This document shows positions 1,365 through 34,402 of a DNA stretch of 64,000 nt, piece by piece. Made by a program: the position numbers and the translations under genes. The stretch comes from Macrostomum lignano (Eukaryota): assembly GCA_002269645.1 (NCBI GenBank), contig NIVC01000939.1:248001-312000 (forward strand), written 5' to 3'. Every line of letters starts with the position of its first letter. Within the stretch, counting starts at the first letter, position 1. The notes under the pieces were generated by a model, which had not been told where the DNA came from, did no database searches, and saw only the letters and a list, made by a program, of their open reading frames with translations.

Positions 1365-2065
1365 GGCTGGGCCACTACTCTCCCTGATCCTCAGTTTCTG
1401 GGCCAGCCTTCCAAATCCTCAGTTGCTGGGCCACCCTTCCAAATCCTCAGTTGCTGGGCCACCCTTCCAAATCCTCAGTTGCTGGGCCACCCTTCCAAAT
1501 CCTCAGTTGCTGGGCCACCCTTCCAAATCCTCAGTTGCTGGGCCACCCTTCCAAATCCTCAGTTGCTGGGCCAGCCTTCCAAATCCTCAGTTGCTGGGCC
1601 ACCCTTCCAAATCCTCAGTTGCTGGGCCACCCTTCCAAATCCTCAGTTGCTATGCCACTACTCTCCCTGATCCTCAGTTGCTGGGCCAGCCTTCCAAATC
1701 CTCAGTTGCTGGGCCACTACTCTCCCAGATCCTCAGCTGCTGGGCCACTACTCTCCCAGATCCTCAGTTGCTGGGCCACTACTCTCCCAGATCCTCAGTT
1801 GCTGGGCCACTACTCTCCCTGATCCTCAGTTGCTGGGCCAGCCTTCCAAATCCTCAGTTGCTGGGCCACTGCCTTCCCAGCTCCTCAGTTGCTGGGCCAC
1901 TACTCTCCCTGATCCTCAGTTGCTGGGCCACTGCTCTCCCAGATCCTCAGTTGCTGGGCCACTGCTCTCCCAGATCCTCAGTTGCTGGGCCACTGCTCTC
2001 CCAGATCCTCAGTTGCTGGGCCACTGCTCTCCCAGACCCTCAGTTGCTGGGTCACTGCCTTCCCA
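1365..2065. repeat. Minisatellite, 28/31-bp unit (CAGTTGCTGGGCCACCCTTCCAAATCCT and variants)
   Basis: Direct tandem units, with the variant type changing along the array. It is the source of ORFs 1287-2123. Confidence 0.95.
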
Positions 2066-2159
2066 GCTCCTCGGCTCTGTAAGCTCATACAAATGGTTCG
2101 AAAGACATCCTTCAGACCTCTGAAGGCAGCCGAAATGCCCGCCTTCCCCTCAACTGCAG

Positions 2160-2483
2160 ATTCCCAGTCAGCAGCAGCAGCAGCAGCCACTGCTGTCCCT
2201 GGCCCCGGCTGCCAGCGCCGCGACCTCTCCAGTCTCCGCCGTTGGCGTCGCGTCGCCGGTGACGTCATCGGATGCCTGCCTGTCCATCGTGCACTCGCTG
2301 ATGTGCCACCGGCAGGGCGGCCCGGATTCCGAGAGCTTCAGTCGGAAGGCGGTCGAGTCGCTGGTGAAGAAGCTCAAGGACAAGCGCGACGAGCTGGACG
2401 CGCTGATCCTGGCGGTGACCAGCAACGGCGCCCAGCCCGGCATCTGCGTCACCATCCCCAGGACTCTAGACGGCCGGCTGCAG

Positions 2484-2563
<80 letters not shown>

Positions 2564-2588
2564 GCCTGCCTGCCTGTCTGTCTGTCTG

Positions 2589-2622
<34 letters not shown>

Positions 2623-2633
2623 GCCTGCCTGCC

Positions 2634-2709
<76 letters not shown>

Positions 2710-2795
2710 GCCTGTCTGTCTGTCTGTCTGTCTGTCTGTCTGCCTGCCTGTCTGTCTGTCTGTCTGTCTGTCTGTTGTCTGTCTGTCTGTCTGCC

Positions 2796-2857
<62 letters not shown>

Positions 2858-6450: not shown

Positions 6451-9400
6451 TCTCCCACCTACCAGGCCATTTCTGCTCTCCCCGCTGTCCCCACCCGCGG
6501 GGTGCACGCGCACCGGCTTCAGCGAGCCGGAGACACTCGGCACTTCGAGCGCCTCCTCCGCGGCTCGGTCGGGCGCCGGTGCGCCAGCCGCCCTGCCGGC
6601 GCGGCCGGCCAGCCTGTAGGAGACGAAGCGGCACATGAGGTGCAGCAGCTGCAGCAGCTCCACGAAGGTCATGGCGCTCCAGCCCAGGTACAGGCCGAGC
6701 AGGCCTCCGATCTCGCTCATGACGTTGCTCAGCGCGTACTTGTGCGTCTCGATGATTGACTGCACCGTGTTTGAGTCCGCGCGCACCTGCAGCTTCACGA
6801 AGTTCGAGGTGATGATGCTGCTGAGCTTGTTCAGCAGGCTGAGCTGCGTGGAGTTCATGTCCATCTGGACGCTGTCGAACACCGAATGGTTGAACGGCTT
6901 CATCAGCGCGGCCGCCCCGGAGGTGGTGTTGGCAGCTGGGGCCTCCTGCAGCAGCGCGTCAACCTGCTGAATGTAGCGCAAGCCGTACATCGGCCGGCCG
7001 TACTCGGCCTCCAGCTCCGCCAGCCTGGAGTTGATCATCATCTTCACCATGGACTGAATGTTGCTCTGCAGGGGCCACTTGGTCCCGGTCACCTGGATGG
7101 AGTAGGCCCGCTGCTTGCACTGGCTGCGGCAGCCGCTGGTGTCCGCCCGCTGCGCCACGAACTTCTTTAGCGCGAGGTAGCAGGCGCTGCTGGCCAGGAA
7201 GTTCGGCTGCCGCACGTCCCGGCAGTTGGGCAGGGCGGCGCGCTTGCGGTCGATCTGGGGAGTCAGGTAAGAAATTCAGCTGCCACACCCATCTCCCACA
7301 CCCATCTCCCACACCCATCTCCCACACCCATCTCCCACACCCATCTCCCCACACCCATCTCCCCACACCCATCTCCCACACCCATCTCCCACACCCATCT
7401 CCCACACCCATCTCCCACACCCATCTCCCACACCCATCTCCCCACACCCATCTCCCACACCCATCTCCCACACCCATCTCCCACACCCATCTCTACACAC
7501 CCATCTCCCACACCCATCTCCCACACCCATCTCCACACACCCATCTCCCACACCCATCTCTACACACCCATCTCCCACACCCATCTCCCACACCCATCTC
7601 CCACACCCATCTCCCACACCCATCTCCCACACCCATCTCCCACACCCAGATCCCACACCCATATCCCCAAACCCATCTCATACACCCATCTCCCACACCC
7701 ATATCCCCACACCCATCTCCCACACCCATATCCCCACACCCATCTCCCACACCCATCTCCCACACCCATCTCCCACACCCATCTCCCACACCCATATCCC
7801 ACACCCATATCCCCACACCCATCTCCACACACCTCTTATCTCCCCACACCCATCTCTACACACCCATCTCCCACACCCATCTCCCACACCCATCTCCCCA
7901 CACCCATCTCCCACACCCATCTCCCACACCCATCTCCCACACCCATCTCCCACACCCATCTCCCACACCCATCTCCCACACCTATCTCCCACACCCATCT
8001 CCACACACCTCTTATCTCCCCAAATCCATCTCCCCACACCCATCACCCCACCCATCTTCCCCACATCCATCACCCCACACTCACCGGCATGTTGGGGTCG
8101 CGGCAGCCGCACTGGGCCTGCAGGTAGTCGGCAGCCGCAGAGAGCTCGCAGTCCTGCTTGAGGCCGGTGAAGTTGTACCAGGCCAGGCTGTAGCTCTGGT
8201 TGGCGAGCTGGCGGTACATCTGGTAGCTGACGGTCTCCGTGGCCTCCAAGCAAGGATCCTCGACCTTGTTGATGGCCTTCCGGTGCTGCTCGGTGAAGCC
8301 GATCACACTGCTCTGGCCCGTGCTGGCCATGACCCGGAACACCGGGTGAGCATAGTACTCTGCGGGGCAGGGAGTATACTACTACATGTACTACTACTAC
8401 TACTACTACTCTTACTACTACTACTACTACTACACTACTACTACTACTACTACTACTACTATTGTGACATTATAACACTATCGTGAAACTATTGTGACAC
8501 TATTGTGAAACATTGTGAAATTATTGTGAAACTACTGTGAAATTATTGTGAAATTATTGTGAAACTATTGTGAAATTATTGTGAAACTATTGTGAAACAT
8601 TGTGAAATTATTGTGAAACTACTGTGAAACTATTGTGAAATTATTGTGAAACTATTGTGAAACTATTGTGAAATTATTGTGAAACTATTGTGAAATTATT
8701 GTGAAATTATTGTGAAACTAGCTCGACAAATGGCAGCAGCTCAACTTATACACCCTGGGAGTCGAGCGCCCACTGGGACAAAGGGGTACTCACCAGGAGA
8801 CAGGGGGCACCTAGAAGACAGGGGGCACCTAGGAGACAGGGGGCGCTCACCTAGGAGACAGGGGGCTCACCTAGGAGACAGGGGGCACCTAGGAGACAGG
8901 GGGCACCTAGAAGACAGGGGGCACCTAGGAGACAGGGGGCGCTCACCTAGGAGACAGGGGGCTCACCTAGGAGACAGGGGGCACCTAGGAGACAGGGGGC
9001 GCTCACCTAGGAGACAGGGAGCTCACCTAGGAGACAGGGGGCGCTCACCTAGGAGACAGGGAGCTCACCTAGGAGACAGGGGGCGCTCACCTAGGAGACA
9101 GGGCGCTCACCTAGGAGACAGGGGGCGCTCACCTAGGAGACAGGGGGCTCACCTAGGAGACAGGGCGCTCACCTAGGAGACAGGGGGCGCTCACCTAGGA
9201 GACAGGGCGCTCACCTAGGAGACAGGGGGCGCTCACCTAGGAGACAGGGGGCGCTCACCTAGGAGACAGGGGGCTCACCTAGGAGACAGGGGGCGCTCAC
9301 CTAGGAGACAGGGGGCTCACCTAGGAGACAGGGGGCGCTCACCTAGGAGACAGGGGGCGCTCACCTAGGAGACAGGGGGCTCACCTAGGAGACAGGGGGC

Positions 9401-10337
9401 GCTCACCTAGGAGACAGGGGGCTCACCTAGGAGACAGGGGCACCGAGGAGACAGTAGGGGGGCACATTCAAGTATTGGCACTCCCTGGGGTTGCGGCCCC
9501 TTCAATTGAAATTCGTTCCTACGAATTCCTACAGAGCCTCAGAGCCTCCCCTCGTTGAACGTCTGGCCTGTCACTTTCACTGGGGAGCCAACTTCATGCA
9601 GCTTCAAGAGCTGATGAAGCGCTCTAAAAGCGTCTCCCTCTCTCACCCGGGTGCTTGACGAACAGCACGGCCCCGGAGGAGCGGTCGTACTCCAGCTCGC
9701 CGTTCATGGTGATGGCGGACAGCGGGAAGGCGCCCTCGCTGGCGAAGTACTGTGACAGGTCAGTGGAGCCGATCAGACTCTCGCTGAACAGGATGAAGGT
9801 GACTTCAGTGAAGGTGCGGTTGGGCAGGAACCGGTAGCAGTTCAGGTAGTCCGGGTGATCCACCGGCTCGTAGAACTCGCGGCTGCTGCAATTTCCTCCG
9901 TCGTTGAACTGACAGCTGAACACCAGGGTCTCCGGCCAGATGCCCAGGTACTGCTTGAACTTGTCCCGGCCTACCGTGTGCACCGCGGCCTCAATGTCGA
10001 TTAAGCTGGCCGAGCCGGGCTGCACCGCGTTGTACTGCGCGATGTACTGCACCAGGTGCTGCATGAATGGAGTCATGCCCAGAGCGGCGCTGGTGAAGCT
10101 GATGGGGACATTGTTGCACAGCACCAGCTCCGGAAACGTGACGCTGTCGGAGTTCTTTATGGTTACCACAGTGGGATTGGCCAGGTATTCGTTAACACTG
10201 ATTGTCACCTGGTAGGAGGTGACGGCCAGCAGCGAGGCGCACATCAGCAGCGCCAGGCCCTGCAGGAAGCTCGGCTTGTCGGCGAAGGGCAGGGGAAACG
10301 CGGCGGGGCCAGTCGCTGACTTCTCGGTCGGTTCCAT
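6421..10337 (-). CDS. DEG/ENaC (amiloride-sensitive channel family) subunit A, ~590-630 aa
   Basis: Exons 10337-9647 (phase 1), 8359-8085 (phase 0), 7254-6463. It then either reads on to the stop at 6421 or splices to a terminal exon 6217-6074. TM1 followed by FPELVLCNN; Cys-rich thumb ([21 protein letters not shown]); TKWP; TM2 [20 protein letters not shown]. Confidence 0.9.
7280..8075. repeat. 13-14-bp minisatellite (CACACCCATCTCC) filling ENaC-A intron 2; G-rich on the coding strand
   Basis: About 55 direct units between the donor at 8084 and the acceptor at 7255. Confidence 0.95.
8375..8720. repeat. (TAC)n tract followed by a ~12-bp ATTGTGAAA(CT/TT) minisatellite in ENaC-A intron 1
   Basis: Both arrays are directly visible. 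Confidence 0.9.
8791..9450 (-). repeat. 18-22-bp minisatellite in ENaC-A intron 1; the coding-strand unit reads CCCCCTGTCTCCTAG|GTGAG
   Basis: Plus-strand unit CTCACCTAGGAGACAGGGGG(CG), about 30 copies. Confidence 0.95.
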
Positions 10338-10481
10338 TTCTGCTGACAAGATGAGGCTGAGAAGATGAGGCTTGGCTACTGCAGTGTCAGGTGCAGATGA
10401 TCTGCAAACTCGCGACACGCAGAGCTTTAATACCCCGTCTCAACCGCCGCCAAACTTTGCAATTTGCTGGTTTTTGCACCC

Positions 10482-11474: not shown

Positions 11475-13295
11475 ATGCAGGCAGTGCAGGACCGAGTCGT
11501 TGCGATGCCATCAACTACAATGACTGAGACCCCCAGCACCGGAGCGCTGCTGACGCAGGTCCTGGCCGCGGCTGCCAGCGAGACCACAGCCCACGGGCTC
11601 AGCAGGCTGGCGGGCCAGAGGCCGCTCTACATCAAGCTCTGCTGGCTGCTGGCCTTCCTGACCCTGCTCGCTGTGTTCACCTTTAGCATGCACGGCTTCA
11701 CAAGCAAGCTCGTCAGAGGCGAGGTCAGCACTTCCTACGAGGCCGAGGCTGTGGACTTCCAGTTTCCCGACGTGTACTTCTGCAACAATGTCCAGGTGTC
11801 GGGCACCTACTCCGTCACGCTCGTCAGTGAGGTCGTCACCGACATCAACGCCAGGATGACCGCCTCGCTCGCCGCCTTCGACTCGGCGCTGCAACGGCTG
11901 CTCAACTCGTCGCTCGCGAACGCCACCGAGTCTCAAATCGAGCAGATGAAGCTGTACAGACTGAAGTCCGCCATCCAGTCAATGCCGTATAGCTTGCTGG
12001 TGGACCATCTCGCTCACAAGGAGCAGCAGACGGTGCTGAAGAACGACAGCAAGTCGGGCGTCTCCCTCAGACCCTTCTACCACCCGAATCACCTCAAGTG
12101 TCTCAAGGTCGAGCTGACCGAGCAGAGACTCGCTGAGCTGAGCAAGGTCAACTCGGAGATCAGCTTCCAGTTCATTCTGGATCCGCACTTTACCGACTTT
12201 GATGACGCATTGAATATCAGCGTGTATTCACAAGTAATGAGCGTGACGGTCCCGCTGTACAACAAAATACAAATATTCGTGTACGACTGGGACCTGGACT
12301 CGCCCTACGAGATCGACAGGCCGATGGGAATGAGGCTGTACCTGGCTCCTCGAGGCGAGTACCCGAGCAGGTTCGTGACCAACTTCCTGCTCGCTCCCGG
12401 CAGGTCCTACAGCATCGGGCTCAGCATGCAGAGCATCAAGAAGGAGCCCGAGGCGTACGGCGGACGCTGCCTGACGGAGGCTCCCGACGTGCAGTTCGTC
12501 AATCCGTACGACGGCTCGGCGTACGCGTTCGGCTACAGCAACAGCTTCTGCTACTTCTCAGAGTTCGCTCGGCAGCTGTCTGTGAACGGCGGCTGCAGTC
12601 CGTACGTGAACCCGCTGCCGTGGCAGTTCAGGCACCTGCGCTTCTGTCTGAATGCGAGCGGCCTGAACGAGTCTCAGATCGAGTCGAACCTCCTGCAGGC
12701 GTTCACGGCTGACACGGCCGCGCTGAGCGACTTCCAGCAGCTGTGCCAGAGCAGGCAGCTGTGCGTGTCACGGAAGTACGAGACCAGCACCTCCAGCGCG
12801 AACTGGCCCAACGAGAACGGGCAGATCCGGCTTGTCACGGGCATCATGAAGCCCATCTTGGGTGGCTTTCCCTATGTATCGAGACCCGCTTGGAGTGCAA
12901 TATATTCCAATATAATTTACCGCCTTATAATAGAAGGGCCTGACATCTCTGCCGCAGAAGCTCTGGCCAACAAGTTCTTCTCCCGCTCGGGCCTGGAGGT
13001 GACGCTGCGCAGCCAGGAGACGCGCAGCTCGCAGATCCGGCTGTCGCCCGGCTACTCTCTGCAGACGTTCATCGCCGACATTGGCGGCACTGCGGGCATC
13101 TACCTCGGCTGCAGCCTGCTGAGCCTGTGCGAGCTCGTCGAGCTGCTGTACAACCTGATCACCAAGACCGGGGGGCAGCGAAGCTCCAGCAACATCGTCC
13201 GCGTGAGGCCCGCGCCACCGATGGGCAGCAGCTCGGGCACGCCGGACTGTAGCGAGGTGGAGCTGGGCGACAAGACGGCCGAAAAGGCAGCTTGA
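11475..13295 (+). CDS. DEG/ENaC subunit B, intronless, 606 aa
   Basis: Single ORF with pre-TM1 TTAHG, TM1 with W, FPDVYFCNN, Cys-rich thumb, ANWP, and TM2 ADIGGTAGIYLGCSLLSLCE. Confidence 0.93.
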   Translation: MQAVQDRVVAMPSTTMTETPSTGALLTQVLAAAASETTAHGLSRLAGQRPLYIKLCWLLAFLTLLAVFTFSMHGFTSKLVRGEVSTSYEAEAVDFQFPDVYFCNNVQVSGTYSVTLVSEVVTDINARMTASLAAFDSALQRLLNSSLANATESQIEQMKLYRLKSAIQSMPYSLLVDHLAHKEQQTVLKNDSKSGVSLRPFYHPNHLKCLKVELTEQRLAELSKVNSEISFQFILDPHFTDFDDALNISVYSQVMSVTVPLYNKIQIFVYDWDLDSPYEIDRPMGMRLYLAPRGEYPSRFVTNFLLAPGRSYSIGLSMQSIKKEPEAYGGRCLTEAPDVQFVNPYDGSAYAFGYSNSFCYFSEFARQLSVNGGCSPYVNPLPWQFRHLRFCLNASGLNESQIESNLLQAFTADTAALSDFQQLCQSRQLCVSRKYETSTSSANWPNENGQIRLVTGIMKPILGGFPYVSRPAWSAIYSNIIYRLIIEGPDISAAEALANKFFSRSGLEVTLRSQETRSSQIRLSPGYSLQTFIADIGGTAGIYLGCSLLSLCELVELLYNLITKTGGQRSSSNIVRVRPAPPMGSSSGTPDCSEVELGDKTAEKAA

Positions 13296-15728: not shown

Positions 15729-17983
15729 ATGCTGCCAGGCCCTGTCGCAGTGCTGCTCCTCGCCTGCTGCAGCCTCGCAGCCGGTCAGGAAATTTTTCGA
15801 TCGAGGATTCTGTGCAGCACCGACTGCTTCAACATCAGCGTGACGAGCCAGGCAGCGGCCTACTCTGCCAGCGTCTGCCACGGCCTCGGAATGCAGCAGC
15901 TCGGTCAGGACAGCCTTGAGCTGTTCGTTCGGCACCTGCCGCAGCTAACAAGGTTGGAGTGTCAATATTTGAACGTGAAAATTTACGCCCACGCGATGAA
16001 GGATTAGAATTACTTTTGCTTCATAGTAATCTTAAGCTGAATTCCGCGTTTCAAATGAATTTGTTCGGGCACTCCTAGACACCCCTCGTAGTTCTGTTTG
16101 GCCCCGAGCGCACAGGTTGAGCCAGAGAGGCCAAGTTGGGGCAGTGCGAGCCAGGGGAATCTGATACTAAAATCTCCCAATTTTTTTAACCCCAGCCAGG
16201 CCGGACCCCAATGATTTGCTTACTTACATCCGGCTTTTCTCTCTAAATCCCTTCGGTGCAATTCTGACATTTCCTTTGTTTATATCGGAGTTTTTTGTGT
16301 CGCGACCGACTTTGACCAGACCGTCTGCGTTGTAAAATATTTTACTTGGCGGTCAGCTGCATGGGCTTCTGGCCGCAAGCCGATGGGCGCTTTACTGCCG
16401 CTTGGAAGCGCGACCAGAGGGGACGTGCGGTCTGCTAGTTGTTTAAGTACCATCTACCGGTACTTGCAGGGCAGTGCACCTCAAAGCTATTCGGGATTTA
16501 GTTAAAGGCCCAGCGTTACTAAAAATGCATTAGCTGATTTATCAGGTCGAAACTTTGTAGAATGCATGACATCGAATTGGGTTTTATCCAAGTCTCCAGC
16601 GTAGTTCTCCAACTTCAAAACTGATAAACTTGTGCAGCTACCTCAGACCTTATAGTTTTGGAGGTGTCAAAGGTATCGGAGCCGTACAAGTGGCTGCGAT
16701 CGCATCGAAGTCTTCCCCACTTGTCACTCTACGCGCCTTGAACCCCCGCAGCGGCCTCAGCCAATCCCTGTACTGGACCGGCGCCACAATGGCGCCGCGG
16801 GCGTCGCCGGCGGATCGCGTGTTCGTGTGGCGCAACCAGACCAGCCAGCTCTACGTCTCCCCGGCCGCCGTGCTGACCGGGTCCAAGGCCTTCAGCGATC
16901 CGGACATCATCCCGACAGTGGCTGTGATAGCCAAGAACACGAAAAACAGCAGAGACTGGCAAGTGAAGAAAGTGACCAAAGGCGAGGGGCTGCCCATCTG
17001 CATGTGCACCTGCCCGAATCCTGCAGCTGCCTGCTGCAGCCAGATGTCGGCGTACTTCTGCAGCAGCGCGAGCGGAACAAATTTCTGCTTCCGCGTGATA
17101 GTCGACACTGCGAGGCCGTACCTGGAGGTCGCGTCCTGGTGTGGCAGGATAGCAGGAGAGATCCCGCTGGACCTGAGCGAGGACGGATCGGTCGAAGCCT
17201 TCAGCAAGTAGGAGCTCTTTAGTTTTAAGCAGCTTGGCATGTCCCTTTGTCCCTTTTAGATAATTGCACCGATTCACATTCGATTCCAACTGGAATTTGC
17301 AGCGTGTTCGACTCGCTCATCGATCCGTGCCATCCTTGCGTGCTTGCCTATGAGGAGTCGCCCTATCGCTTCAACGGCGGCCACGGCGCCAAGCTGCAGA
17401 TCAAGAATATGAGCCTGGTGGACGGCTACCTGCAGAAAAAAGTCTCCGAGTCCAAATGGGGCATCGTTGTGGTCCGAGACTCGGCTACGCTCGCCTTCTC
17501 CGGCCTGCAGGAGGTGGACACCTCGGCTAGTAGTGCTCAATTTGTCTGCGCCATTCCGGCTGAGCCAGAAACGACAACAACGCCCCCTGTCACTGTAGAG
17601 TCTAAAGCAGCCACCTTAACAACTTCAATGCCCTCAACAACAGTAACTTTGACGACACCAGCTGCAACATCTACAACACCTTCAGCAACACCTTCAGCAA
17701 CACCTACAACACCTTCAACAAGATCTTTAACAACATCAACAACTGCACAATCGACAGACAGGATGACAGCATCCACGGAAGAGTCCGAAACTACCCCAGG
17801 TGCGCAGCCGGCTCGGCTCCAGCTACTCAAAAGTCCCAGGAAGAATTGATCGCTAAGAATATTCAAACTTACGAGAGTTCCAAACAGAAAGCCATTGTAT
17901 ATCTCCTACCAGCTCTGTTTATGGTCCTAGCACTGCTTGTGATTTACTACTTCGGAAATCTGGCATTCACCCAGGGTGTCTGA
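15729..17983 (+). CDS. Secreted/surface protein: signal peptide, two C-type-lectin-like domains, Thr/Ser/Pro mucin stalk and a probable C-terminal TM helix
   Basis: Exons 15729-15952, 16752-17207, and 17303-17849 (or 17303-17799 plus a TM exon ending 17983); introns 1-2 are phase 2. Signal MLPGPVAVLLLACCSLAAG; CTLD-like YWTGA...FVWRNQTS...PICMC and CFRV...YLEVASWC...FVC; AIVYLLPALFMVLALLVIYYFG in a second frame. Confidence 0.65.
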
Positions 17984-19165: not shown

Positions 19166-22100
19166 CTAGAAAACATTGGACTTCTTTCTTGGCTGCAGCA
19201 GCACCGCTGCCATCTGCTCCAGAAGCTCCCGTTGCTGTCGCAGCTCCTCGCCCTGATCGTCCAGCCAGTTTGCTGCGGCCTCCTGGCGCCGAATCACCTC
19301 GGCCAGCTGCTGCTGCATAGCCGCGCCCTCCTGGCTGAAGTCCTCCGGTTCCAGACCGACACCGTCTAGCTTAGGTCGCAGCTTGCGCAGCGTCACGGAC
19401 TGGTAGAACAGGTAGAACAGATATACAAAGTTGCGCTGGTTCTGCACCAGCACTTCGATCAAGGAGCGGCGACCGCTGCGGCGGCGGCAGCAGGAGAGAC
19501 GAGACAGAAGCCACATCAGAAAGTTGCGGGTCTCCAGCAGAATATTTAGCGGGGCTGGCAGGGCGGAGCGCTTGAAGAACTCCTGGTTGAGGTCGTATCG
19601 CTCAAACAGCCACAAAGACTTTGACTCGGAGTCCACCATGTCGATGGTTTTGCTAAACATGGCCACGATGACGTTCAGAAGAAGAACCTGCACAATGACG
19701 ATGTAGGCCACCATCAGTACGTACGGCACCAGCACGTTTCCGGGCGACTCCACGCACTTCTCCACTGAGTCCTCGGCCTCACCGCTTGTCTCATTTCTCT
19801 TGCACACGTTCTGCATATCGTCGAGGCCGTATTCGCCTGCATGGAAGGCAAAATGCAGTTTAACTTAATATAACACCAACTACCATTCAATTACAAACGC
19901 AAAATTTATCTGCATTTTTTTCTAAGGTTACAAGAAACGTCCCAAAGCCAATAATGAATGACTTAACTGACATGTAGACAAACTGTAACAAAAATCCTGG
20001 TACCTAGTTCAGTATACCTTGCATGTGCATGTAGATGCGTCATCGAAATTGATTCTGGTTGGCCCCCTAAACTCACCGACGATCGTGTAGAAGGTTCGAT
20101 GAAACATTTCGATGAGGATATCGTAGGCGGGCAGCTGGATAGCCTTCCCGTTGCTGCCGATGTATTGACCGTTCGGCCAGAGCAGGGCATGGAATGCGAT
20201 GCCAAAGCCCAGCATGATGACGAAAAGGATGTATAAAAAGGGAATGAAGTCTTTCTTGATCATCAGCGACAGCATCTTCAGTTTGACGCCCACCGACTCC
20301 AGCACAATCGAGATGAACAATATGCGGATCCAGAAGATCAGGGTGGTAACGACGATTAAGATGTAGCACATGTCCTGCGCAGCCTTGCCGTGGCCAATGA
20401 CGTACGTGGACAGGCGAGATGCGGGGCTGAACTGCCTGGTGACGAAAGCCAGGAAGCCACATGATATGGCTACCAGGTCGATGGCGTTCCACCCGTCTGA
20501 TATGTAGACTAGCAGCGTCTCCTCCTCGCAAGCTGCAATCATCTCTCGCAACTCTTCAACGAAGATTCCAAGCAGGGCAAAGTAGCAGAAAATCTCCGTG
20601 CTACTGGCGGTGCCTTGGAAGTCGTGCAGGATCATGTAGGACAGCAGGCTCACAAAGACAAAGTAAAATATGGCGTGCAGGCGGAACTTCACACAGGGAG
20701 TGTTGTAGAACAGCAGCATCTCCTTCATGTAGTCCACGGCACGCACCAGCAGGCCATTGTGGCGGTGTGGCCTGTGGGCTTCATCCTCTTCGGTTGCCAG
20801 CTTGTTCTTTTTGCCAGAAACTGGCAGCAGTTGCACGAGCTCCTGTGCCTTCTCTGGAGCTTCCGTGTCGTTCTGTAAAATAGCAGCATTGCAGACAGTC
20901 TCAACTGGGTCATTGAGAACCGTCTCGAGGAAGCTGCGCGTGCCGGGGCGCCGATAGCGTTTGATGAGGCGCGGCAGAAGCAGCATGAACGGAGGCAAGA
21001 AGCCAGACACAATGACCAGCTCGCGCGTGAGGACGCTGCTAAAATCGAAGAAGTCGCCGTACCAATTTTTGTCCGTAGCCAACTCCACGATGTCCAGCTT
21101 GATGAATTCGCTTGCGCAGCCTCGGGCCGAGAGATCCAGGATGTTATAGCCGGCATAGTTCGGCAATGGTAGGCTGACGTAGCTAATGGTAAGACTGTTG
21201 TTTGGCGAGTTGTCCACTTCCTTGACCTCTTTAATGACCTGGATGGCCATGCCCTCGCAGATTTCCGCGACTCGACCGGCTTTGTCGACGAAGACGTCCT
21301 CGATGTCACGCCGACGGCTGAGTGAACGCAGTACGGTCGTGGCGAGCAGAGCTAGCGGTACCAGATCGAACTCCTCTTGGCGAAGCAGAGTGGGCACGAG
21401 TCTCAGGCGCCCAGTAAGGATGGCCCACATTACGAGCGACTGTAGAGGGTCTCGCATTGGTCGCTTATGGCAGCTACTGTCCGGGTTGTCGCTACAGCTG
21501 TCTTGCATGTCAAACATGAGGGGACGCTTGCTGAAGGACCAATAGGATGTAATTCTAGCCAGAAACTTGTTCATCTTGACAAAGTCGATTTTCACACCGC
21601 TCTCGTCGGTGCAGTTACGACGCAGCAGCTCGCGCACTCCAGCCTTCATTTTGCGCAGCGCCTTGGCATAGAGATGGTCGATGCTTAACTCGATGTGGCG
21701 AGACAGAGATGACCAGAGGCTGCGATTTGCTACAAGGCGCTGCAAAAGTGGCTCATTCTGTGGGAACAGTACCAGCTGCACCACCTTCCAGGCGGCGCGA
21801 CAAAGTATTCCTGAGCTCTCCAGATCCGCGCGAAGCCCAGCATTGAAAGCCTCCTGCAGCTCGCGAATCAAACGGTCGGCATCCACTTTTCTCTTGGTGA
21901 TGACGGACTCCAGCATCTCCAGTTGCATGCACCGATCCGCTTCTCTGATCTGCACGGCCAACTTTGAGCTGCAGAGACCGTCAATGTGCAGCAAGTGGTC
22001 CAGGTAAGCGCCACCTTCGCGGGAGCTGACAATCTGAGCCATGTTCTCGGCGTTGACAAAGTGACGCAGGTCGCGGATGATCTGCCGGCCGAGGCAATCA

Positions 22101-22744
22101 ATGCCGGAAGTGTCGCCAGTCTCAGTCAGAAGGTCGATAGCTGTTTTTCCGTTGGCATCCATCACATTGAAGTCGGCCCCGTGCCGCAGCAGCAGCGCCA
22201 GCAGTTCCGGATTCTCGCACAGGGCGGCAATGTGGAGCGGCGTGTTGCCACTTGCATTTTGCTGGTTGACGAACTCCGGGCCAGCCTTCACAACAAGTCG
22301 CGCCGCGTGACAGTCCTCAGCAAAGCAGGCCACGTGGAGCGCCATATCACCGTAGGCATCCTCGAAGCTGCAGTCGGCATCGTGGCTCAGAAGCTCACGA
22401 ACTATTTCCAGCTGCTTGGCTGCCACCGCCAGGTGCAGAGGCGTCTCCTTGGCCTGGTTGGTGGCGTTAACGTCGGCGCCGCGGTCCAGCAGCAGGCGCA
22501 GACAAGCAAGTTTATCGCTACGCGCGCACACGTGCAGCACCGAGTCCCCGTTGCGCGCCCGAGCTCCGATTTCAGCCCCAGCGTCCAGGAGCCGGCCCAG
22601 CGCGTCCAGAGAGCCTTCGGCGGCAGCAGCGTGAATCAGGCGACGACCGTTGGTGGCGTCGGCCAGGCCGTTTGGCGTTACTCCCGGTGATGCCATGAAG
22701 TCCGCCAGGGTGACCGTCGGCTCGTTCACTGCAAGACGGTCCAT
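19166..22744 (-). CDS. TRP cation channel with TRPM-type body and N-terminal ankyrin repeats, ~1112 aa
   Basis: Exons 22744-20077 and 19836-19166 (phase-1 GT-AG intron). Five full ANK repeats (e.g. ETPLHLAV, NTPLHIAA); MHR4-like PLQSLVMWAIL...EGMAIQVI...YNILDLS...NWYG; S1-S6; pore GEYGLDD; LLLNVIVAMFS; TRP helix WLFERY...LPAPL; C-terminal coiled coil. Confidence 0.92.
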
Positions 22745-28977: not shown

Positions 28978-31530
28978 TCACATCCAGCCATTGACTCCGC
29001 CGTCTGCGGGCAGCACGGGGTCCTCGCTATGGGACTTGGACTTGGGCAGCAGGTCCAGGCCGTCCAGGTCCAGGCCGAATAGGAACTGGCGCTGCTCGGA
29101 CTGCGGCTGCTGTTTCTGCTGCTGCTGCTGCCGGTGGTGCTGCGCCACCGAGTGCGCGTCCACTGAGTAGCGCCGGTCGGCCATCAGCTGCATCGGCGGC
29201 GGCGGCACCGAGGTTGGCGGAAGGCCGCCAAAGAGAACGCCGTCCCACACGGCTGGAGGCGGACCGCCCTCTTGCCAGAGCCGCTTCAACTCGGCCAGCG
29301 ACTGCGCATCGGCGGAGGCGGCAGCGGCGGCGCCTTCATCAGCGGTCTGTCGGGAGAGCGCGGCTGCTATGGTGACGCTGGCCGGCGCGGAGCCGCGGCG
29401 CTGCGTGTCCTCGGCCTGTCTGCGCGCATGGAACTCGTGAACCAGCCGAGCGGCCTCTGGCGACGGCTCCAACTCGGGGTCCAGCCACAGGCCCTGGCAG
29501 CGCAGGCTGACATACTCGCAGATGAGCTGCTTGGCGAAGCGAACCCGCTCTCTGGTGCCGCAGATTGTGAAATGCATCTGCGGCGACGGCAGGCCCGGGA
29601 TCGATTCCTGCTTGCGCGGCGTGGCGATGTGCGTGTCAGACAGCTGCTGCACCCAGCGGATGGTCTGGCCAGAGGCGCCAACGATTAGGCCGACCTTGTC
29701 CTGCTCCACATACAGCCGGTCCTCGGTGCGGTTGGGCTCGATGCGGCTCAGGCGCTCCTGCTGCACCTTGCTGAAGTGCTCGCTCATCTGCAGGATGATG
29801 CGCTTGGCCTGCAGTAGTGCGGGAGGGACACGTCGGAGTAGGTCAGCATGAAGGGTGGCAAAGCAACAGCTAATGGCTACTAAGCAATTCACTGCAACAT
29901 ACCTCGCCAAGTTTCTCAGGCATTCCAGTGATCTCAAACACTGGCAACTCGTCACGAGCTGGCGTCTTCACCCACACCTTGAGCTGCTCACGCAGGTGCC
30001 TGATTCTCTGGCCTAGAAGTGGAAAATAGAATAGGATAGGATGAAAATGTAATTGACGAATGTTACATATCAATTCTAATGATATAAAACATTTTATTTC
30101 TATAAACAAAGTAAAATGATCCATTGGAATTTAGATTTTTAAGTATGACTAAAGCTATCTTAGCAATAGACAGGGGTATAAGGAGGGGGGATAGGGGGAA
30201 TGTATCCTCCCTGAAGAGCCTGACCAAAACTTTTTTGCTGCCCTTTGTTGCTATACATGCTACCATGTGACTATGTCATAGCACTTTTACCTTGGTGTAC
30301 CCCCTCCTCATAGAAAATTCACCTTGGTGTATCCTCCCATAGGAAATTCTTGGCTATACTCCTAGCAATAGATTATTATTTATCTAGACAATGCAAGTAA
30401 ACAATAATTTAAGTAAAATTAGACACATTTGCTTTAAAACTTATCAAACAAAAAGGTAGCATCAATTTAAGTTCTTGCAAATTTTTTTGCAATATATAAA
30501 TGGTTTTAAATAAGATATATTGGCATCTGGAAGTCTACTTATTTTTAAATATTTAGTATAACATAATAAACTTTTCCTAGGCCTAGTTAAAAAATCTATT
30601 TAATTGTCTTTGTGAAACAGATATTTTAAATTTTATCAAATCAATATTTCTAATAATATAATATTGATTTGATTTAAATATGGCTAAATCACAAATTTGA
30701 ATATTTTGAAATTTAAATTTTATAATTAGATTATCAATATCATAGATAGACCCTTATACATTTTTATAAATTATAAGATCTATAAAATTTCAAAATAGAA
30801 AGTACTTACCATTCTTGCCAACAATCTCAGCAACATGATCTGATGAGGGCACTTGGATTCTTTCCGTCATAGTTAGTTTTGGTTCTTTATTCTCTCCAAT
30901 AGCAGAAGGGCTAATTGTAGCTGCCATTCTTTTTAAGAAATCTGATTGCCCTTCTTCATCTTGCAATCCAATTTTCATTTGCTCATCAAATCGTCTTGCT
31001 AGCTCAGACATGGCGCATTGGTCCTTACTCTGTTGAGTTGGCTGAACTTTCTGGTCTAGGATAGAAGCAGATTGAATATAGTCAGCATTTCTTCCAGTGG
31101 CAGAAAACGAGAGTTCATTATCTAAGCGATTAGACAACAGTGAACGCGGCTTCTGCTTTTGATCAAATGCTTCGCCAGTCTTGAAAGTGGGACTGCCATT
31201 AGGCAGCGAGCCCAATAACCACTGGCACTGATCTTTCCCAATGCCTGATCCATTGGTGTTGTAGCACGACTTGAGCTCAGAAATCAACGCAGCTTGATCG
31301 GATCCACTTCCACTATTTGAGCGACGTGAAACCGACAATACGGAAGTTAAAGCGTCAGAATTTGACTCCGTCTTGGGCAAATCTGTTGTTTGCAATGCAC
31401 TAAAAAAGTCGTCTGCCAACGAATATCTGCAATTCGACGACACAGGTGTGTTTGGTGAAAACGATGATAGACAACCATTGACAGAACCAGATGGGAACTT
31501 GAATGTGCTCTCAAGCACGGACTCAGACAT
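28978..31530 (-). CDS. MEX3: MEX-3 family RNA-binding protein (two KH domains, no RING), ~553 aa
   Basis: Exons 31530-30810 (phase 1), 30012-29903 (phase 0), 29808-28978. KH1 TERIQVPSSDHVAEIVGKNG|QRIRHLR...KTPARDELPVFEITG; AKRIILQMSEHF; KH2 VGLIVGASGQTIRWVQQLSDTHIATP. Confidence 0.92.
30171..30364. mobile_element. 194-bp hAT-type MITE in MEX3 intron 1
   Basis: 8-bp direct repeat GCAATAGA at 30163-30170 and 30365-30372. Termini are CAGGGGTATA and TATACTCCTA (8/10 inverted match). Confidence 0.75.
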
Positions 31531-32890
31531 AACTGTCAGTTGAAAGAAATGAAAAGCACTAGCATTAAAGGCAAAGCCTTTAAGATATGAATGACTTACG
31601 GAAACGCAAATCGCAAGACACGCATGTCTAGCGCGTGCAAAATGAATGCGTTATATTGAACAAAATATTCTTAGATAAACTGTTTTAACAAAATTTAAGT
31701 AAATTAGACTTTTTATAACGTAATAGCAAAAACCTTTTTCGCTCCAAAAAGCTTTTTAATTTTATCCTTACAATATTTTTATTTTCTTTTAAATAAATTA
31801 AACTATTCTCAGAACAAAATGAACTGAATATTTTGTTAGAAACAGTTCCTCACAGTTTCATAGAAACATAGAAACAGTTTCAGTTTCACCTACCTACGCC
31901 TTACCTAAACCTACTTTAGACTCGAGAACTACTCCAAGTTGTTCAATGTTATTCAATAAATGATGCAAATGTTTACGAGTAACATTCAAATCGCACTTTA
32001 CCTAACTTTACCTAAATCGCACTTCACTTTACCTAAAACCTAATTATAAGTTTTAGGTGATTTTATTTTGATATTTTTAAATGTGAGCTGAAATAAATAG
32101 GCTATGAATATAAATACTGATCTGTTATTTTAACCTTTGATTTAATTCACATTTTACCTGCCTTTTTAGTGCTATTGTGCACTAGTGCTTTAGCTATGCA
32201 TTTGTCAATGGCAGTGCCTATTCGTCTGGTATCAGATGAATAATGTAACTATTAGTATTATTCATATGGTACACCAGATAAAAAACAGTGAAGTTATTCG
32301 TCCGGCACAGTAAAGTATAATAAAAACTTGTTAAATTCAGGGAATACCCATAAAAGTAGTATATAGTTCACTTTTAGGCTAGAAGCAGAAAATATTTGTT
32401 ATGATTAGATAGCACTGTTTCTCATGCTATGTGGTATTAACCAGATAAATAGGGAAACATGGCTATTATCAAGTAACCAGACATATAACCATATTGCTTT
32501 TTGTCTGGTTATTGGACAAATAACAACTGCCTTAGATTTATTCTTCATTTAGAATTTTTGAGTTTGTTATTTTCAAGCTGCTATCTAAAGTGGCTATCTA
32601 ATTTGACTTTATTTTAATATCATAAATGAAACCATCCATATGCCTTTTTGAATAATCTCAGTAAAAAATATATTTTTATCTAATTTATAATTATAGTTTT
32701 ATAAATTTATAATATTAAAAGGATAAAGGCAAAATACCAATTTGTTATCTTATGCTACAGTGCATGCATTTTAAAACATAAGCAATGTTGTTTAACTATA
32801 TTTGTAACGAATTTATTATCAAATGAAAAATGCCTACATAGAAAAGTCAGTTATAGACTGTTGCTCAGAGTCATTTGTTGATTTTTTCAG

Positions 32891-34402
32891 GCTCAGCCTC
32901 AATTACTGATTCGCTGTGCTCTGCGTTTGGCTGCAGCAGCAGCTCCAGTTTCTCTTGCAATGTTGATGCACCAGAGTGCATTACCACGCATTGCCCCTGT
33001 TGCTATGGCAACCATGCACCGCCGCTTTGGCATCTCGGCCGCCCTGCTGAAGGCCAAGAAGAAGACCCAGCAACAGAAGCACGCAGCTTCTGCTCCCGCC
33101 GCTGCTGCCACCGAGATTGTCAGCAACCCGGAGCTGCTGGAGCGGCTGGAGCTGGACAAGCTGACGGCCAGAGGGCAGGCCGAGCTGGCCAGCTTCAAGG
33201 AGCTGCTGTTCCGCAACCTGCGGCTGCAGATCACCGCGGATGTCCTGCACGACATTGAGGTGGGTTGTTGAAATTTCGTTTCTTAAAAAATATTTTCAAG
33301 GCTGGCTTCGCGCGAAAAATATTGCATGGGAATATCCCTGTTCTTCACACAGCCTGAAGCTAATTTTGTCAGGAAATCAATCCCTGTTCTTCACACAGCC
33401 TGAAGCCAATTTTGTCAGGAAATCAATCCCTGTTCTTCACACAGCCTGAAGCCAATTTTGTCAGGAAATCAATCCCTGTTCTTCACACAGCCTGAGGCCA
33501 ATTTTGTCAGGAAATCAATCCCTGTTCTTCACACAGCCTGAGGCCAATTTTATCAAGAAATCAATCCCTGTTCTTCACACAGCCTGAAGCCAATTTTGTC
33601 AGGAAATCAATCCCTGTTCTTCACACAGCCTGAAGCCAAATTTGTCAGGAAATCAATCCCTGTTCTTCACACAGCCTAAAGCCAATTTTGTCAGGAAATT
33701 AGCTGCAATTTTAAATTTGAATTTGCGTCCCCGCACTGAACCCGCGCGAGTCCCCCCCCTGCTTCCTGTAAATAAACAGGATTTGAAAATGAAAACTGCG
33801 GCTCCAATATTCTAAAGCGTATTTTTGCATAAAGTCAGTCTTCAAAGATTTTTTAAGAAGCGAGAGTTCTTGTCACTATTCAATCCGTCTTGCTACATCT
33901 CCGATAGAGGCTGAGGCTGTTAATCCGCCAACCCGATCGCCCCTCCCAGGTGAGCACCGGCAGCGGCCGGGTGCCTCTCGGCAGTCTGGCTGACGTCTAT
34001 CAGAAGTCCTCGGATACATTAGTCCTTGACCTGACAGCCAACCGGTCCGCAGTGCCGGCCGTCAGACAGGCCCTGGCGTTGAAGGGCTTCAACGGCCGGG
34101 AGCAGGCGGCCGACGCCGACTGCCTGACTGTGAGCCTCCCGCGCGTCACTGGCGAGCACCGGCGCCGTCTGGCAGCCAACGGGCGCGAGCTGCTGCACCG
34201 CGCCAAGCTCGCCACTAAGCGGCTGCACGACAGCGCCACCAAGCGGCTGAAGGAGGCGGAACGGGCCGGGCACTACTCCAAAGATGACCTGCGCGCCTGC
34301 CAGCAGCTGCTGGTGGCTGAAATCAAGCGGGCCAACGCGCAGCTGGACTCCGCCTGGGCTGCCAAGGAGAAGGAGCTGCTGGGCACCGGCACCAGCGACT
34401 GA
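32891..34402 (+). CDS. MRRF: Mitochondrial ribosome recycling factor
   Basis: Exons 32891 (first ATG 32960)-33259 and 33950-34402, phase 0. Basic, non-acidic presequence; RRF motifs VPLGSLADVYQKSSDTLVLDL, SLPRVTGEHRRRL, YSKDDLRACQQLL. Confidence 0.85.
33335..33700. repeat. 46-bp minisatellite (~8 copies) in the MRRF intron
   Basis: AATCAATCCC at 33375, 33421, 33467 and onward. Confidence 0.95.

What the first reader, a model, noticed from the sequence alone, without database searches (positions are those of the whole stretch)
19166..22744. Ankyrin-TRPM chimeric channel: ANK repeats in place of MHR1/2
Seen: five complete ankyrin repeats plus a partial sixth (aa ~32-206) sit in the same 2668-nt exon as an MHR3/MHR4-like region (PLQSLVMWAIL, YNILDLS, NWYG). 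These are followed by TRPM-style S5-S6, pore GEYGLDD with two outer-pore Cys, TRP helix WLFERY/LPAPL, and a coiled coil. There is no MHR1/2 and no NUDT9H or kinase tail. Known: TRPM channels are defined by MHR1-4 and lack ankyrin repeats, which belong to TRPA/C/N/V. Inference: a domain-swapped TRP class, possibly a sensory channel with an ANK-based input module.
Basis: partly seen in the sequence, partly recalled or inferred. Interest (0 to 1): 0.8.

Follow-up and report, generated by a model that had tools for sequence, protein, structure and literature searches.

The report
Macrostomum ankyrin-TRPM channel, TRPM_MCLZ family
This is an intact flatworm ion-channel gene in which ankyrin repeats replace the usual TRPM front domain, but the design is already known: it is that of TRPM_MCLZ, the parasite channel opened by the drug meclonazepam, and this gene is a free-living relative of it.

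Summary
The minus strand at 19166-22744 carries a two-exon, 1112-aa gene. It encodes six ankyrin repeats, a helical MHR3/MHR4-like region, S1-S6 with a GEY pore, a TRP helix and a C-terminal coiled coil. It has no SLOG/MHR1-2, NUDT9H or kinase domain.

The channel part is TRPM-type by sequence, profile comparison and predicted fold.

The architecture is not a new class. It is that of flatworm TRPM_MCLZ (Smp_333650), described in 2023-2026 as a TRPM-like channel that lacks MHR1/2 and carries N-terminal ankyrin repeats. That channel has been cloned and shown to conduct cations.

In a neighbour-joining tree of the channel core, the window protein falls in one ankyrin-bearing, SLOG-free clade (91% bootstrap) with verified TRPM_MCLZ orthologues. 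It sits inside a Macrostomum lignano-specific expansion of at least 11 divergent paralogue groups (100% bootstrap). It is therefore a co-orthologue, not a 1:1 orthologue.

Only about half of the published drug-pocket residues are conserved. The TRPM Ca2+ site and the GEY filter are kept. A second genomic copy shows dN/dS of 0.20.

Verdict: a new member of a known kind. What the papers I could search do not mention is the free-living expansion. Interest is modest.

The parts
19166..22744 (-). Whole coding region of the ankyrin-TRPM-like channel gene (1112 aa, 2 exons)
   Evidence: ORF and splice reconstruction. It is 98% identical to M. lignano BOX15_Mlig004154g2.
20077..22744 (-). Exon 1 (2668 nt; aa 1-889 plus 1 nt): ankyrin repeats, MHR3/4-like region, S1-S5 and the pore helix
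   Evidence: Uninterrupted ORF. An in-frame stop lies 12 nt upstream of the ATG. The donor is G|GTGAGT.
19837..20076 (-). Intron (240 nt, GT...AG, phase 1) in the pore loop, between V889 and G890
   Evidence: Paralogue P0002 has an intron at the same position. The intron is 96% identical in the second genomic copy.
19166..19836 (-). Exon 2: selectivity filter GEY, pore loop, S6, TRP helix, C-terminal helices and the stop codon
   Evidence: P0005 (95% identical) spans aa 817-1112 across the junction.
22061..22651 (-). Six ankyrin repeats (aa 32-228; the sixth is divergent)
   Evidence: Pfam Ank_2 E=3e-36. AF2 shows six helix pairs, with pLDDT 74-92 up to about aa 220 and about 70 in the last helix. 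Repeats 4-6 contain columns that are invariant across 28 family members.
21685..22060 (-). Helical region in the position of the first half of MHR3 (aa 229-352)
   Evidence: Helical in both AF2 models; pLDDT is about 80-88 from aa 268, is lower over aa 229-258, and drops below 50 at aa 259-265. hhalign finds no significant sequence homology here. The assignment to MHR3 rests on position and on the length of the Foldseek alignments.
20978..21684 (-). Region homologous to the end of TRPM MHR3 plus MHR4 (aa 353-589)
   Evidence: hhalign of the family profile against 54 SLOG-bearing TRPMs: probability 99.7%, E=4e-25. phmmer to TRPM8 residues 548-692. Foldseek hits are all TRPM.
19655..20698 (-). 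Transmembrane domain S1-S6 (aa 683-950; this span includes the intron)
   Evidence: Ion_trans. The TM query's best 60 PDB sequence matches are all TRPM. AF2 helices at 683-708, 715-740, 751-771, 780-815, 824-855 and 920-950.
19814..20128 (-). Pore helix and selectivity filter (aa 873-897, FYTIVGEYGLDD; this span includes the intron). Y886 corresponds to the pore residue Y1038 of Sm.TRPM_MCLZ
   Evidence: Alignments.
19571..19645 (-). TRP helix (aa 954-978, LWLFERYDLNQEF), followed by LPAPL
   Evidence: Alignment to the nvTRPM2 and TRPM5 TRP helices. AF2 helix at 954-978.
19199..19333 (-). C-terminal long helix, a putative coiled coil or 'pole' helix (aa 1058-1102)
   Evidence: AF2 helix with block-mean pLDDT of about 66-77 up to about aa 1100. 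The coiled-coil assignment is an inference.

Best explanation
The locus encodes an intact member of the flatworm 'TRPM-like' subfamily typified by TRPM_MCLZ. In this subfamily the SLOG/MHR1-2 nucleotide-binding domain of TRPM and TRPS is absent, and a stack of about six canonical ankyrin repeats sits in its place, in front of a retained MHR3/MHR4 region, a TRPM-type S1-S6 channel, a TRP helix and a C-terminal coiled coil.

The window gene is one of at least 11 divergent paralogue groups in Macrostomum lignano. Together these are the sister group of the lineage that contains parasite TRPM_MCLZ, so the window gene is a co-orthologue.

Likely mechanism (inferred): a tetrameric, Ca2+-permeable, non-selective cation channel. 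It would be gated through the S1-S4/TRP-helix cavity and would use the TRPM transmembrane Ca2+ site as a co-factor site. It would not be controlled by ADP-ribose or other nucleotides, because it has neither SLOG nor NUDT9H. The ankyrin stack probably serves as an assembly or protein-interaction module.

What is shown here: the architecture, the homology, the clade membership and purifying selection. What is inferred: the conduction properties (from the tested schistosome relative), the Ca2+ dependence and the role of the ankyrin repeats. The natural stimulus is unknown.
For: Architecture.

TRPM-type core: PDB phmmer matches aa 432-1010 to TRPM3 at 2e-32. The best 60 PDB matches to the TM region alone are all TRPM. 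hhalign aligns aa 353-589 to MHR3-end/MHR4 at 99.7% probability. Foldseek with the aa 200-680 model returns only TRPM structures in the top 50. With the full-length model, 49 of the top 50 are TRPM.

Family: every full-length close relative in the 1.84-billion-protein search has ankyrin repeats and no SLOG. They come from M. lignano, Opisthorchis, Dicrocoelium and Schistocephalus.

Identification of TRPM_MCLZ: P0195 has H827, H831, Y864, E868, R943, H946, Y1038 and Y1117 exactly as published. P0197 has Y940 and P0204 has F952 (PMC10788528, PMC12861061). The P0195 cluster also contains CAH8481013.1, the accession that paper used for S. bovis TRPM_MCLZ.

Neighbour-joining tree of the TM+TRP core (144 taxa, 308 columns, 300 bootstraps): ankyrin/no-SLOG clade 91%; Macrostomum expansion 100%; neodermatan TRPM_MCLZ 100%.

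Function retained: dN/dS is 0.20 against a second genomic copy. E731, E734, N753, D756 and E975 match the nvTRPM2 positions E893, Q896, N918, D921 and E1110; that these form the Ca2+ site is from my knowledge of the nvTRPM2 structure. Sm.TRPM_MCLZ gives Ca2+ signals and inward currents in HEK293 cells (PMC10788528).
Against: No transcript or expression data for this locus were available.

The tree is distance-based, unrooted, and contains no labelled TRPS or TRPC/N/A outgroup. The link of the ankyrin clade to particular flatworm SLOG-TRPMs has only 47% bootstrap support.

aa 207-352 has no significant sequence homology to MHR3. Foldseek TM-scores are low (0.30-0.42, rmsd about 9-20 Å), although all the hits are TRPM.

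Three of the eight published pocket or pore positions differ (Y694, I727, F976). This includes the position of H831, which is reported as invariant in parasite orthologues. A fourth, F810, takes the cestode-type residue at the variable S4 position. Pharmacology therefore cannot be transferred.

Confidence: 0.85

Rival explanations
1. A previously unknown, domain-swapped TRP class.
For: General reviews and phylogenies state that TRPM and TRPS lack ankyrin repeats and always carry MHR1-4 (PMC7306681; PMC13143021). Against that background the architecture looks new.
Against: The same architecture is described for TRPM_MCLZ in three papers. The window protein is in the same clade as verified TRPM_MCLZ orthologues.
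Confidence: 0.03
2. A direct 1:1 orthologue of TRPM_MCLZ that shares its meclonazepam sensitivity.
For: It has the same architecture and clade. H690, E731, R807 and pore residue Y886 are conserved.
Against: The tree gives a many-to-one relation: a Macrostomum-only clade of 10-11 representative sequences (11 paralogue groups once the window gene's own group is counted) at 100% bootstrap, sister to the lineage holding TRPM_MCLZ. At the S4 position that sets sensitivity the protein has F810, the cestode-type residue; E. granulosus TRPM_MCLZ, which carries F there, did not respond to the drug (PMC12861061). Y694, I727 and F976 differ from pocket residues H831, Y864 and Y1117. The filter is GEY, whereas parasites have EVS.
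Confidence: 0.05
3. The ankyrin clade is not nested within TRPM proper. It is a separate sister lineage, for example a derived flatworm TRPS or a deeper 'TRPM-like' branch.
For: PMC12861061 places TRPM_MCLZ 'next to' the other flatworm TRPMs and suggests the label 'TRPM-like'. Support for nesting among flatworm SLOG-TRPMs is only 47%. No TRPS reference was in my data set.
Against: The closest solved relatives are TRPM2-type, TRPM5, TRPM4 and TRPM3 channels. The nearest neighbours in the tree are flatworm SLOG-TRPMs. TRPS is defined by SLOG plus Nudix domains, and both are absent here.
Confidence: 0.1
4. A pseudogene or an assembly or annotation chimera.
For: The public copy P0001 is truncated to 985 aa by a frameshift.
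Against: The window copy has an intact 1112-codon frame. Ankyrin repeats through S5 lie in one exon. dN/dS is 0.20, and sequence downstream of the 1-bp deletion in the other copy is still conserved in the correct frame. The architecture is shared by 11 paralogue groups in M. lignano and, according to PMC12861061, by 63 parasite orthologues.
Confidence: 0.03

Closest known systems
TRPM_MCLZ (Schistosoma mansoni Smp_333650 and its orthologues in trematodes, cestodes and monogeneans)
   Same: N-terminal ankyrin repeats with no SLOG/MHR1-2. An MHR4-like region. A TRPM-type S1-S6 and TRP helix. A short C-terminus with no enzyme domain. Few exons (2 here, 3 there). The same clade in the TM tree (91% bootstrap). 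Residues H827, E868, R943 and Y1038 are conserved.
   Different: This is one of at least 11 Macrostomum paralogue groups, not a single-copy orthologue. It is shorter (1112 versus about 1380 aa), with a shorter, uninterrupted ankyrin block. Pocket residues H831, Y864 and Y1117 are Y, I and F here. The filter is GEY, whereas parasites have EVS. The organism is free-living. Drug sensitivity is untested and is predicted to be absent.
Canonical TRPM channels (TRPM2-type, TRPM3, TRPM4, TRPM5, TRPM8)
   Same: The TM domain, pore helix, G-E filter motif and pore-loop Cys pair. The TRP helix and box. Transmembrane Ca2+-site residues. MHR4 and the end of MHR3. C-terminal helices.
   Different: No SLOG/MHR1-2, no cysteine-rich N-terminal domain, no NUDT9H and no kinase. 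Canonical ankyrin repeats occupy the position of the SLOG domain.
Flatworm ANK+SLOG TRPMs (M. lignano P0022; Clonorchis/Opisthorchis P0145)
   Same: Ankyrin repeats at the extreme N-terminus of a TRPM. They are among the nearest neighbours of the ankyrin-only clade in the tree.
   Different: They keep a full SLOG domain between the ankyrin repeats and MHR3/4, and are much longer (about 1700-1800 aa).
TRPN/NOMPC and TRPA1
   Same: An N-terminal ankyrin stack in front of a six-TM TRP channel. NOMPC is the top full-length Foldseek hit by E-value.
   Different: The NOMPC superposition is poor (TMq 0.26, rmsd 32 Å). Sequence similarity outside the ankyrin repeats covers only aa 930-1020, at E=2.5e-4. 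There is no MHR4 in TRPN or TRPA.

Membership tests
TRPM (sensu stricto) | N-terminal SLOG / MHR1-2 domain | tested here: not met
   No LSDAT/SLOG hit in Pfam. A jackhmmer SLOG profile finds 72 of 144 tree taxa but none in the ankyrin clade. No SLOG-coding DNA in the window.
TRPM (sensu stricto) | MHR3 and MHR4 regions | tested here: inconclusive
   MHR4 and the end of MHR3 are met: hhalign 99.7%, E=4e-25 over aa 353-589, and all Foldseek hits are TRPM. The first half of MHR3 (aa 207-352) has no significant sequence homology.
TRPM (sensu stricto) | TRPM-type S1-S6, pore and TRP helix | tested here: met
   The best 60 PDB matches to the TM region are all TRPM, E 7e-28 to 1e-14.
TRPM (sensu stricto) | C-terminal coiled coil | tested here: inconclusive
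   AF2 predicts a 45-residue helix at aa 1058-1102 with pLDDT of about 66-77. No oligomer model or coiled-coil scoring was run.
TRPM_MCLZ-like ('TRPM-like') flatworm subfamily | N-terminal ankyrin repeats in place of MHR1/2-SLOG | tested here: met
   The definition comes from PMC11731825 and PMC12861061.
TRPM_MCLZ-like ('TRPM-like') flatworm subfamily | Channel core in one clade with verified TRPM_MCLZ | tested here: met
   Neighbour-joining bootstrap 91% for the 27-taxon ankyrin clade. The references were verified by their published residue numbers and by accession CAH8481013.1.
TRPM_MCLZ-like ('TRPM-like') flatworm subfamily | 1:1 orthology with Smp_333650 | tested here: not met
   The Macrostomum genes form their own clade (100%), sister to the lineage that contains TRPM_MCLZ (88%).
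TRPM_MCLZ-like ('TRPM-like') flatworm subfamily | Conserved meclonazepam-pocket residues (H827, H831, Y864, E868, R943, Y1117) and the S4 determinant 946 | tested here: inconclusive
   H690, E731 and R807 are conserved. Y694, I727 and F976 differ. The S4 determinant is F810, the cestode type.
TRPM_MCLZ-like ('TRPM-like') flatworm subfamily | Activation by (S)-meclonazepam; Ca2+-permeable cation current | not testable with these tools
   This needs heterologous expression. It has been shown only for schistosome orthologues (PMC10788528).
TRPS (soromelastatin) | SLOG plus C-terminal Nudix domains; clade with ced-11 | tested here: not met
   There is no SLOG or Nudix domain. Clade membership could not be tested, because no labelled TRPS sequence was available.
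TRPN / TRPA / TRPC | TM domain closest to that family | tested here: not met
   No non-TRPM channel appears among the best 60 PDB matches to the TM region. Outside the ankyrin repeats, NOMPC similarity covers only aa 930-1020, at E=2.5e-4.

The most novel reading that the evidence does not exclude
The TRPM_MCLZ-type architecture predates parasitism. In the free-living, early-branching flatworm Macrostomum it has radiated into at least 11 divergent paralogue groups. These keep the ancestral TRPM G-E-Y filter and the Ca2+ site, whereas parasites retain a single copy with a changed filter (EVS). The subfamily may have arisen from an ANK-SLOG-TRPM of the kind still present in flatworms (P0022, P0145) by loss of the SLOG domain. 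None of this is mentioned in the TRPM_MCLZ papers I could search. It would give a tractable free-living model for the natural function of an anthelmintic drug target.
Probability: 0.55. Interest if true: 0.45.

Novelty: new member of a known kind. Interest (0 to 1): 0.3.

Why it matters
TRPM_MCLZ is a validated anthelmintic target whose natural stimulus and physiological role are unknown, and it has been studied only in parasites. An expanded set of intact relatives in Macrostomum lignano shows three things. The ankyrin-for-SLOG design is old within flatworms. The parasite pore and drug pocket are derived states. And there is an experimentally tractable setting in which to ask what these channels sense (M. 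lignano is transgenic and amenable to RNAi, from my own knowledge).

It also corrects the textbook statement that TRPM-type channels never carry ankyrin repeats, although the parasite literature has already made that point.

Tried and rejected
1. The search for homologous proteins with the non-ankyrin part and with a 9-sequence family alignment returned only three Macrostomum proteins. The word index did not reach further. The exhaustive representative search and a third search seeded with the Dicrocoelium orthologue were needed.

2. Supplementary sequence files of the two TRPM_MCLZ papers are not held. I therefore identified TRPM_MCLZ indirectly, through published residue numbers and an accession.

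3. The first bootstrap run with Biopython neighbour-joining timed out. I replaced it with a numpy implementation.

4. I looked for a hidden MHR1/2 exon by tblastn with five TRPM N-terminal regions across the window and found none.

5. I tested aa 207-352 for MHR3 homology by profile-profile alignment. The local alignment stops at aa 353, and the forced global alignment has near-zero confidence there.

6. I considered NOMPC-like affinity, because NOMPC is the top full-length Foldseek hit. I rejected it: TMq is 0.26, rmsd is 32 Å, and the match is driven by the ankyrin repeats.

7. The organisms behind four unnamed clade members (P0013, P0015, P0019, P0027) could not be determined.

8. No maximum-likelihood phylogeny program was available.
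Full report
**1. What is in the sequence.**

The minus strand between 22744 and 19166 carries a two-exon gene.
- The ATG at 22744 is preceded by an in-frame TAA 12 nt upstream.
- Exon 1 runs to 20077 (2668 nt) and ends G|GTGAGT.
- A 240-nt intron ends ...CATGCAG at 19837.
- Exon 2 (19836-19166) restores the frame and produces FYTIVGEYGLDD.
- The product is 1112 aa.

Composition and neighbouring genes are those of an animal genome: DEG/ENaC channels, a rhodopsin-type GPCR, an MH1 protein and a KH protein. The protein is 98% identical to Macrostomum lignano BOX15_Mlig004154g2.

**2. Domain anatomy.**

- Pfam gives strong ankyrin hits over aa 37-196 (Ank_2, E=3e-36). It gives Ion_trans over aa 691-960, and a near-threshold TRPM2-like domain over aa 421-520.
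- A full-length AlphaFold2 model (28-sequence alignment, mean pLDDT 73.8) shows the following:
  - six ankyrin helix pairs at aa 30-224;
  - a helical region at aa 235-410;
  - a second helical block at aa 437-597;
  - a disordered charged linker at aa 612-662;
  - a pre-S1 helix, S1-S6 and a pore helix at 873-888;
  - a TRP helix at 954-978;
  - two further helices and a 45-residue terminal helix at 1058-1102.
- The protein has no SLOG, Nudix or kinase domain. tblastn with five TRPM N-terminal regions finds no SLOG-coding DNA anywhere in the window.

**3. Which kind of TRP channel.**

- In the PDB sequence search, aa 432-1010 match TRPM3 (E=2e-32) and Nematostella TRPM2.
- With the TM region alone, the best 60 distinct PDB sequences are all TRPM (E 7e-28 to 1e-14).
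- NOMPC, outside its ankyrin repeats, matches only aa 930-1020, at E=2.5e-4.
- aa 417-565 align to TRPM8 MHR4.
- A profile of the family aligned against a profile of 54 SLOG-bearing TRPMs gives 99.7% probability (E=4e-25) over aa 353-589. That span is the end of MHR3 plus MHR4.
- aa 207-352 show no significant sequence homology.
- An AF2 model of aa 200-680 (pLDDT 74.9) retrieves only TRPM structures in the Foldseek top 50. These align over 335-450 columns but with low TM-scores.
- The full-length model gives NOMPC first (TMq 0.26, driven by the ankyrin repeats) and then 49 TRPM structures.
- The distance from the end of the N-terminal module to the MHR4 landmark P-x-x-L-x-x-W is about 200-220 aa here. 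In the canonical TRPM P0022 it is about 222 aa from the SLOG end. The ankyrin block therefore sits where the SLOG domain would be.

**4. Relatives.**

- The exhaustive search of 1.84 billion representative proteins with the non-ankyrin part gave 1171 hits.
- All close full-length hits have ankyrin repeats and no SLOG. The named ones are all flatworms: many M. lignano paralogues, plus Opisthorchis, Dicrocoelium and Schistocephalus.
- Eleven M. lignano clusters below 50% mutual identity belong here: the window gene/P0001, P0002, P0004, P0006, P0007, P0008, P0009, P0010, P0012, P0014 and P0021.

**5. The architecture is already described.**

- Park et al. (PMC10788528) identified Smp_333650 as the meclonazepam-activated channel TRPM_MCLZ. 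They describe a long N-terminal domain with 'ankyrin-like' repeats, three exons, and Ca2+ signals and inward currents in HEK293 cells.
- Sprague et al. (PMC11731825) state that it lacks the MHR1/2 or SLOG domain and has ankyrin-type modules instead.
- Rohr et al. (PMC12861061) report it in all parasitic flatworms (63 orthologues). They suggest the label 'TRPM-like' because of the N-terminal ankyrin repeats.
- I verified which of my hits are TRPM_MCLZ in two ways.
  - Published residues: P0195 (Schistosoma cluster, 1380 aa) has H827, H831, Y864, E868, R943, H946, Y1038 and Y1117 exactly as published. S. turkestanicum P0197 has Y940. E. granulosus P0204 has F952.
  - Published accession: the P0195 cluster contains CAH8481013.1, the accession that paper used for S. 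bovis TRPM_MCLZ.

**6. Phylogeny.**

I built a neighbour-joining tree of the S1-TRP core with 144 taxa, 308 columns, Kimura distances and 300 bootstraps. Its main groupings are:
- window gene + P0002: 100%;
- the Macrostomum-only clade: 100%;
- neodermatan TRPM_MCLZ: 100%;
- TRPM_MCLZ plus four unnamed sequences, as sister group to the Macrostomum clade: 88%;
- the whole ankyrin/no-SLOG clade of 27: 91%.

The next neighbours are flatworm SLOG-bearing TRPMs, with weak support (47%). The window gene is thus a co-orthologue of TRPM_MCLZ within a lineage-specific expansion. The tree is distance-based, unrooted and lacks labelled TRPS and outgroups. The position of the clade relative to TRPM subclades and TRPS therefore remains open.

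**7. Signs of function and likely mechanism.**

- Purifying selection: a second genomic copy (NIVC01003136.1, 97.9% identical) gives dS 0.044, dN 0.0087 and dN/dS 0.20. It carries one 1-bp deletion in exon 2, which explains the truncated public model. Sequence downstream of the deletion remains conserved in the true frame.
- Splice site: paralogue P0002 has an intron at the same pore-loop position.
- Ca2+ site: E731, E734, N753, D756 and E975 align with nvTRPM2 E893, Q896, N918, D921 and E1110. I know these as the transmembrane Ca2+ site of that structure.
- Pore: the filter G-E-Y followed by L-D-D resembles divalent-permeable TRPMs. Y886 matches the pore residue Y1038 of Sm.TRPM_MCLZ. C898 and C917 lie in the pore loop.
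- Drug pocket: H690, E731 and R807 are kept. Y694 (for H831), I727 (for Y864) and F976 (for Y1117) differ. The S4 determinant is F810, as in the meclonazepam-insensitive cestode channel (PMC12861061).
- My reading is a Ca2+-permeable, Ca2+-sensitised cation channel. It would be gated through the S1-S4/TRP cavity and would lack nucleotide control. I do not expect it to respond to meclonazepam, and its natural ligand is unknown. These points are inferences.

**8. Verdict.**

The gene is a new member of a known kind.

The TRPM_MCLZ papers I could search do not mention two things. One is the presence of this subfamily in a free-living flatworm and its large expansion there. The other is the contrast between the GEY filter in Macrostomum and EVS in parasites.

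Flatworms also have TRPMs with ankyrin repeats in front of an intact SLOG domain (P0022, P0145). This suggests, but does not show, that the subfamily arose by loss of the SLOG domain.

Noticed in passing
window 9624-10418 (-) and 11475-13295 (+): Two DEG/ENaC (amiloride-sensitive sodium channel, PF00858) coding regions lie head-to-head about 1 kb apart. The + strand one is a 606-aa single ORF (E=8e-36). The - strand one covers only the N-terminal part (E=9e-10).
   Followed up: partly
window 41436-42479 (-): A single-ORF rhodopsin-family GPCR (7tm_1, E=5e-41), which starts at profile position 57 of the model.
   Followed up: no
window 1982-3364 (+) and 28978-29955 (-): ORFs with an MH1 (SMAD-type) domain (E=1e-21) and a KH domain (E=4.5e-10). 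They are probably exons of larger genes.
   Followed up: no
window 8712-9176 (+): An ORF made of a tandem peptide repeat ([20 protein letters not shown]...), which implies a DNA minisatellite next to the DEG/ENaC genes.
   Followed up: no
window 17247-17849 (+): A Thr/Ser/Pro-rich, mucin-like 200-aa ORF about 1.3 kb beyond the 3' end of the channel gene, on the opposite strand.
   Followed up: no
window 30001-34000: An AT-rich stretch (GC 0.34-0.40) in a window that otherwise averages about 0.52 GC.
   Followed up: no
L001 (NIVC01003136.1:51883-61081), equivalent to window ~19629: A second M. lignano copy of the locus is collinear over more than 9 kb at 91-97% identity. It has a 1-bp deletion in exon 2 that truncates the public protein model to 985 aa. 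This is either an assembly indel or a very recent lesion.
   Followed up: partly
P0022 (M. lignano, 1781 aa) and P0145 (Clonorchis sinensis, 1708 aa): These flatworm TRPMs have ankyrin repeats (aa 98-203 and 63-176) in front of an intact SLOG domain. This third architecture, ANK-SLOG-MHR3/4-TM, is a possible precursor of the ankyrin-only subfamily.
   Followed up: partly
P0011 (Opisthorchis viverrini, 1906 aa): This gene model contains two Ion_trans domains. That fits the duplicated alternative exon 3a/3b reported for Opisthorchiid TRPM_MCLZ in PMC12861061; the model has evidently joined both exons.
   Followed up: partly
P0036, P0037, P0087 (Glandiceps and Patiria TRPMs): An ankyrin profile built from the window protein also hits a 50-65-aa stretch just after the SLOG domain of deuterostome TRPMs. 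This agrees with the published view that MHR3 contains degenerate ankyrin repeats.
   Followed up: no
L002 (NIVC01000082.1), paralogue P0002: The 52%-identical paralogue has five exons, against two here. Introns outside the pore-loop position have therefore been gained or lost within the Macrostomum expansion.
   Followed up: partly
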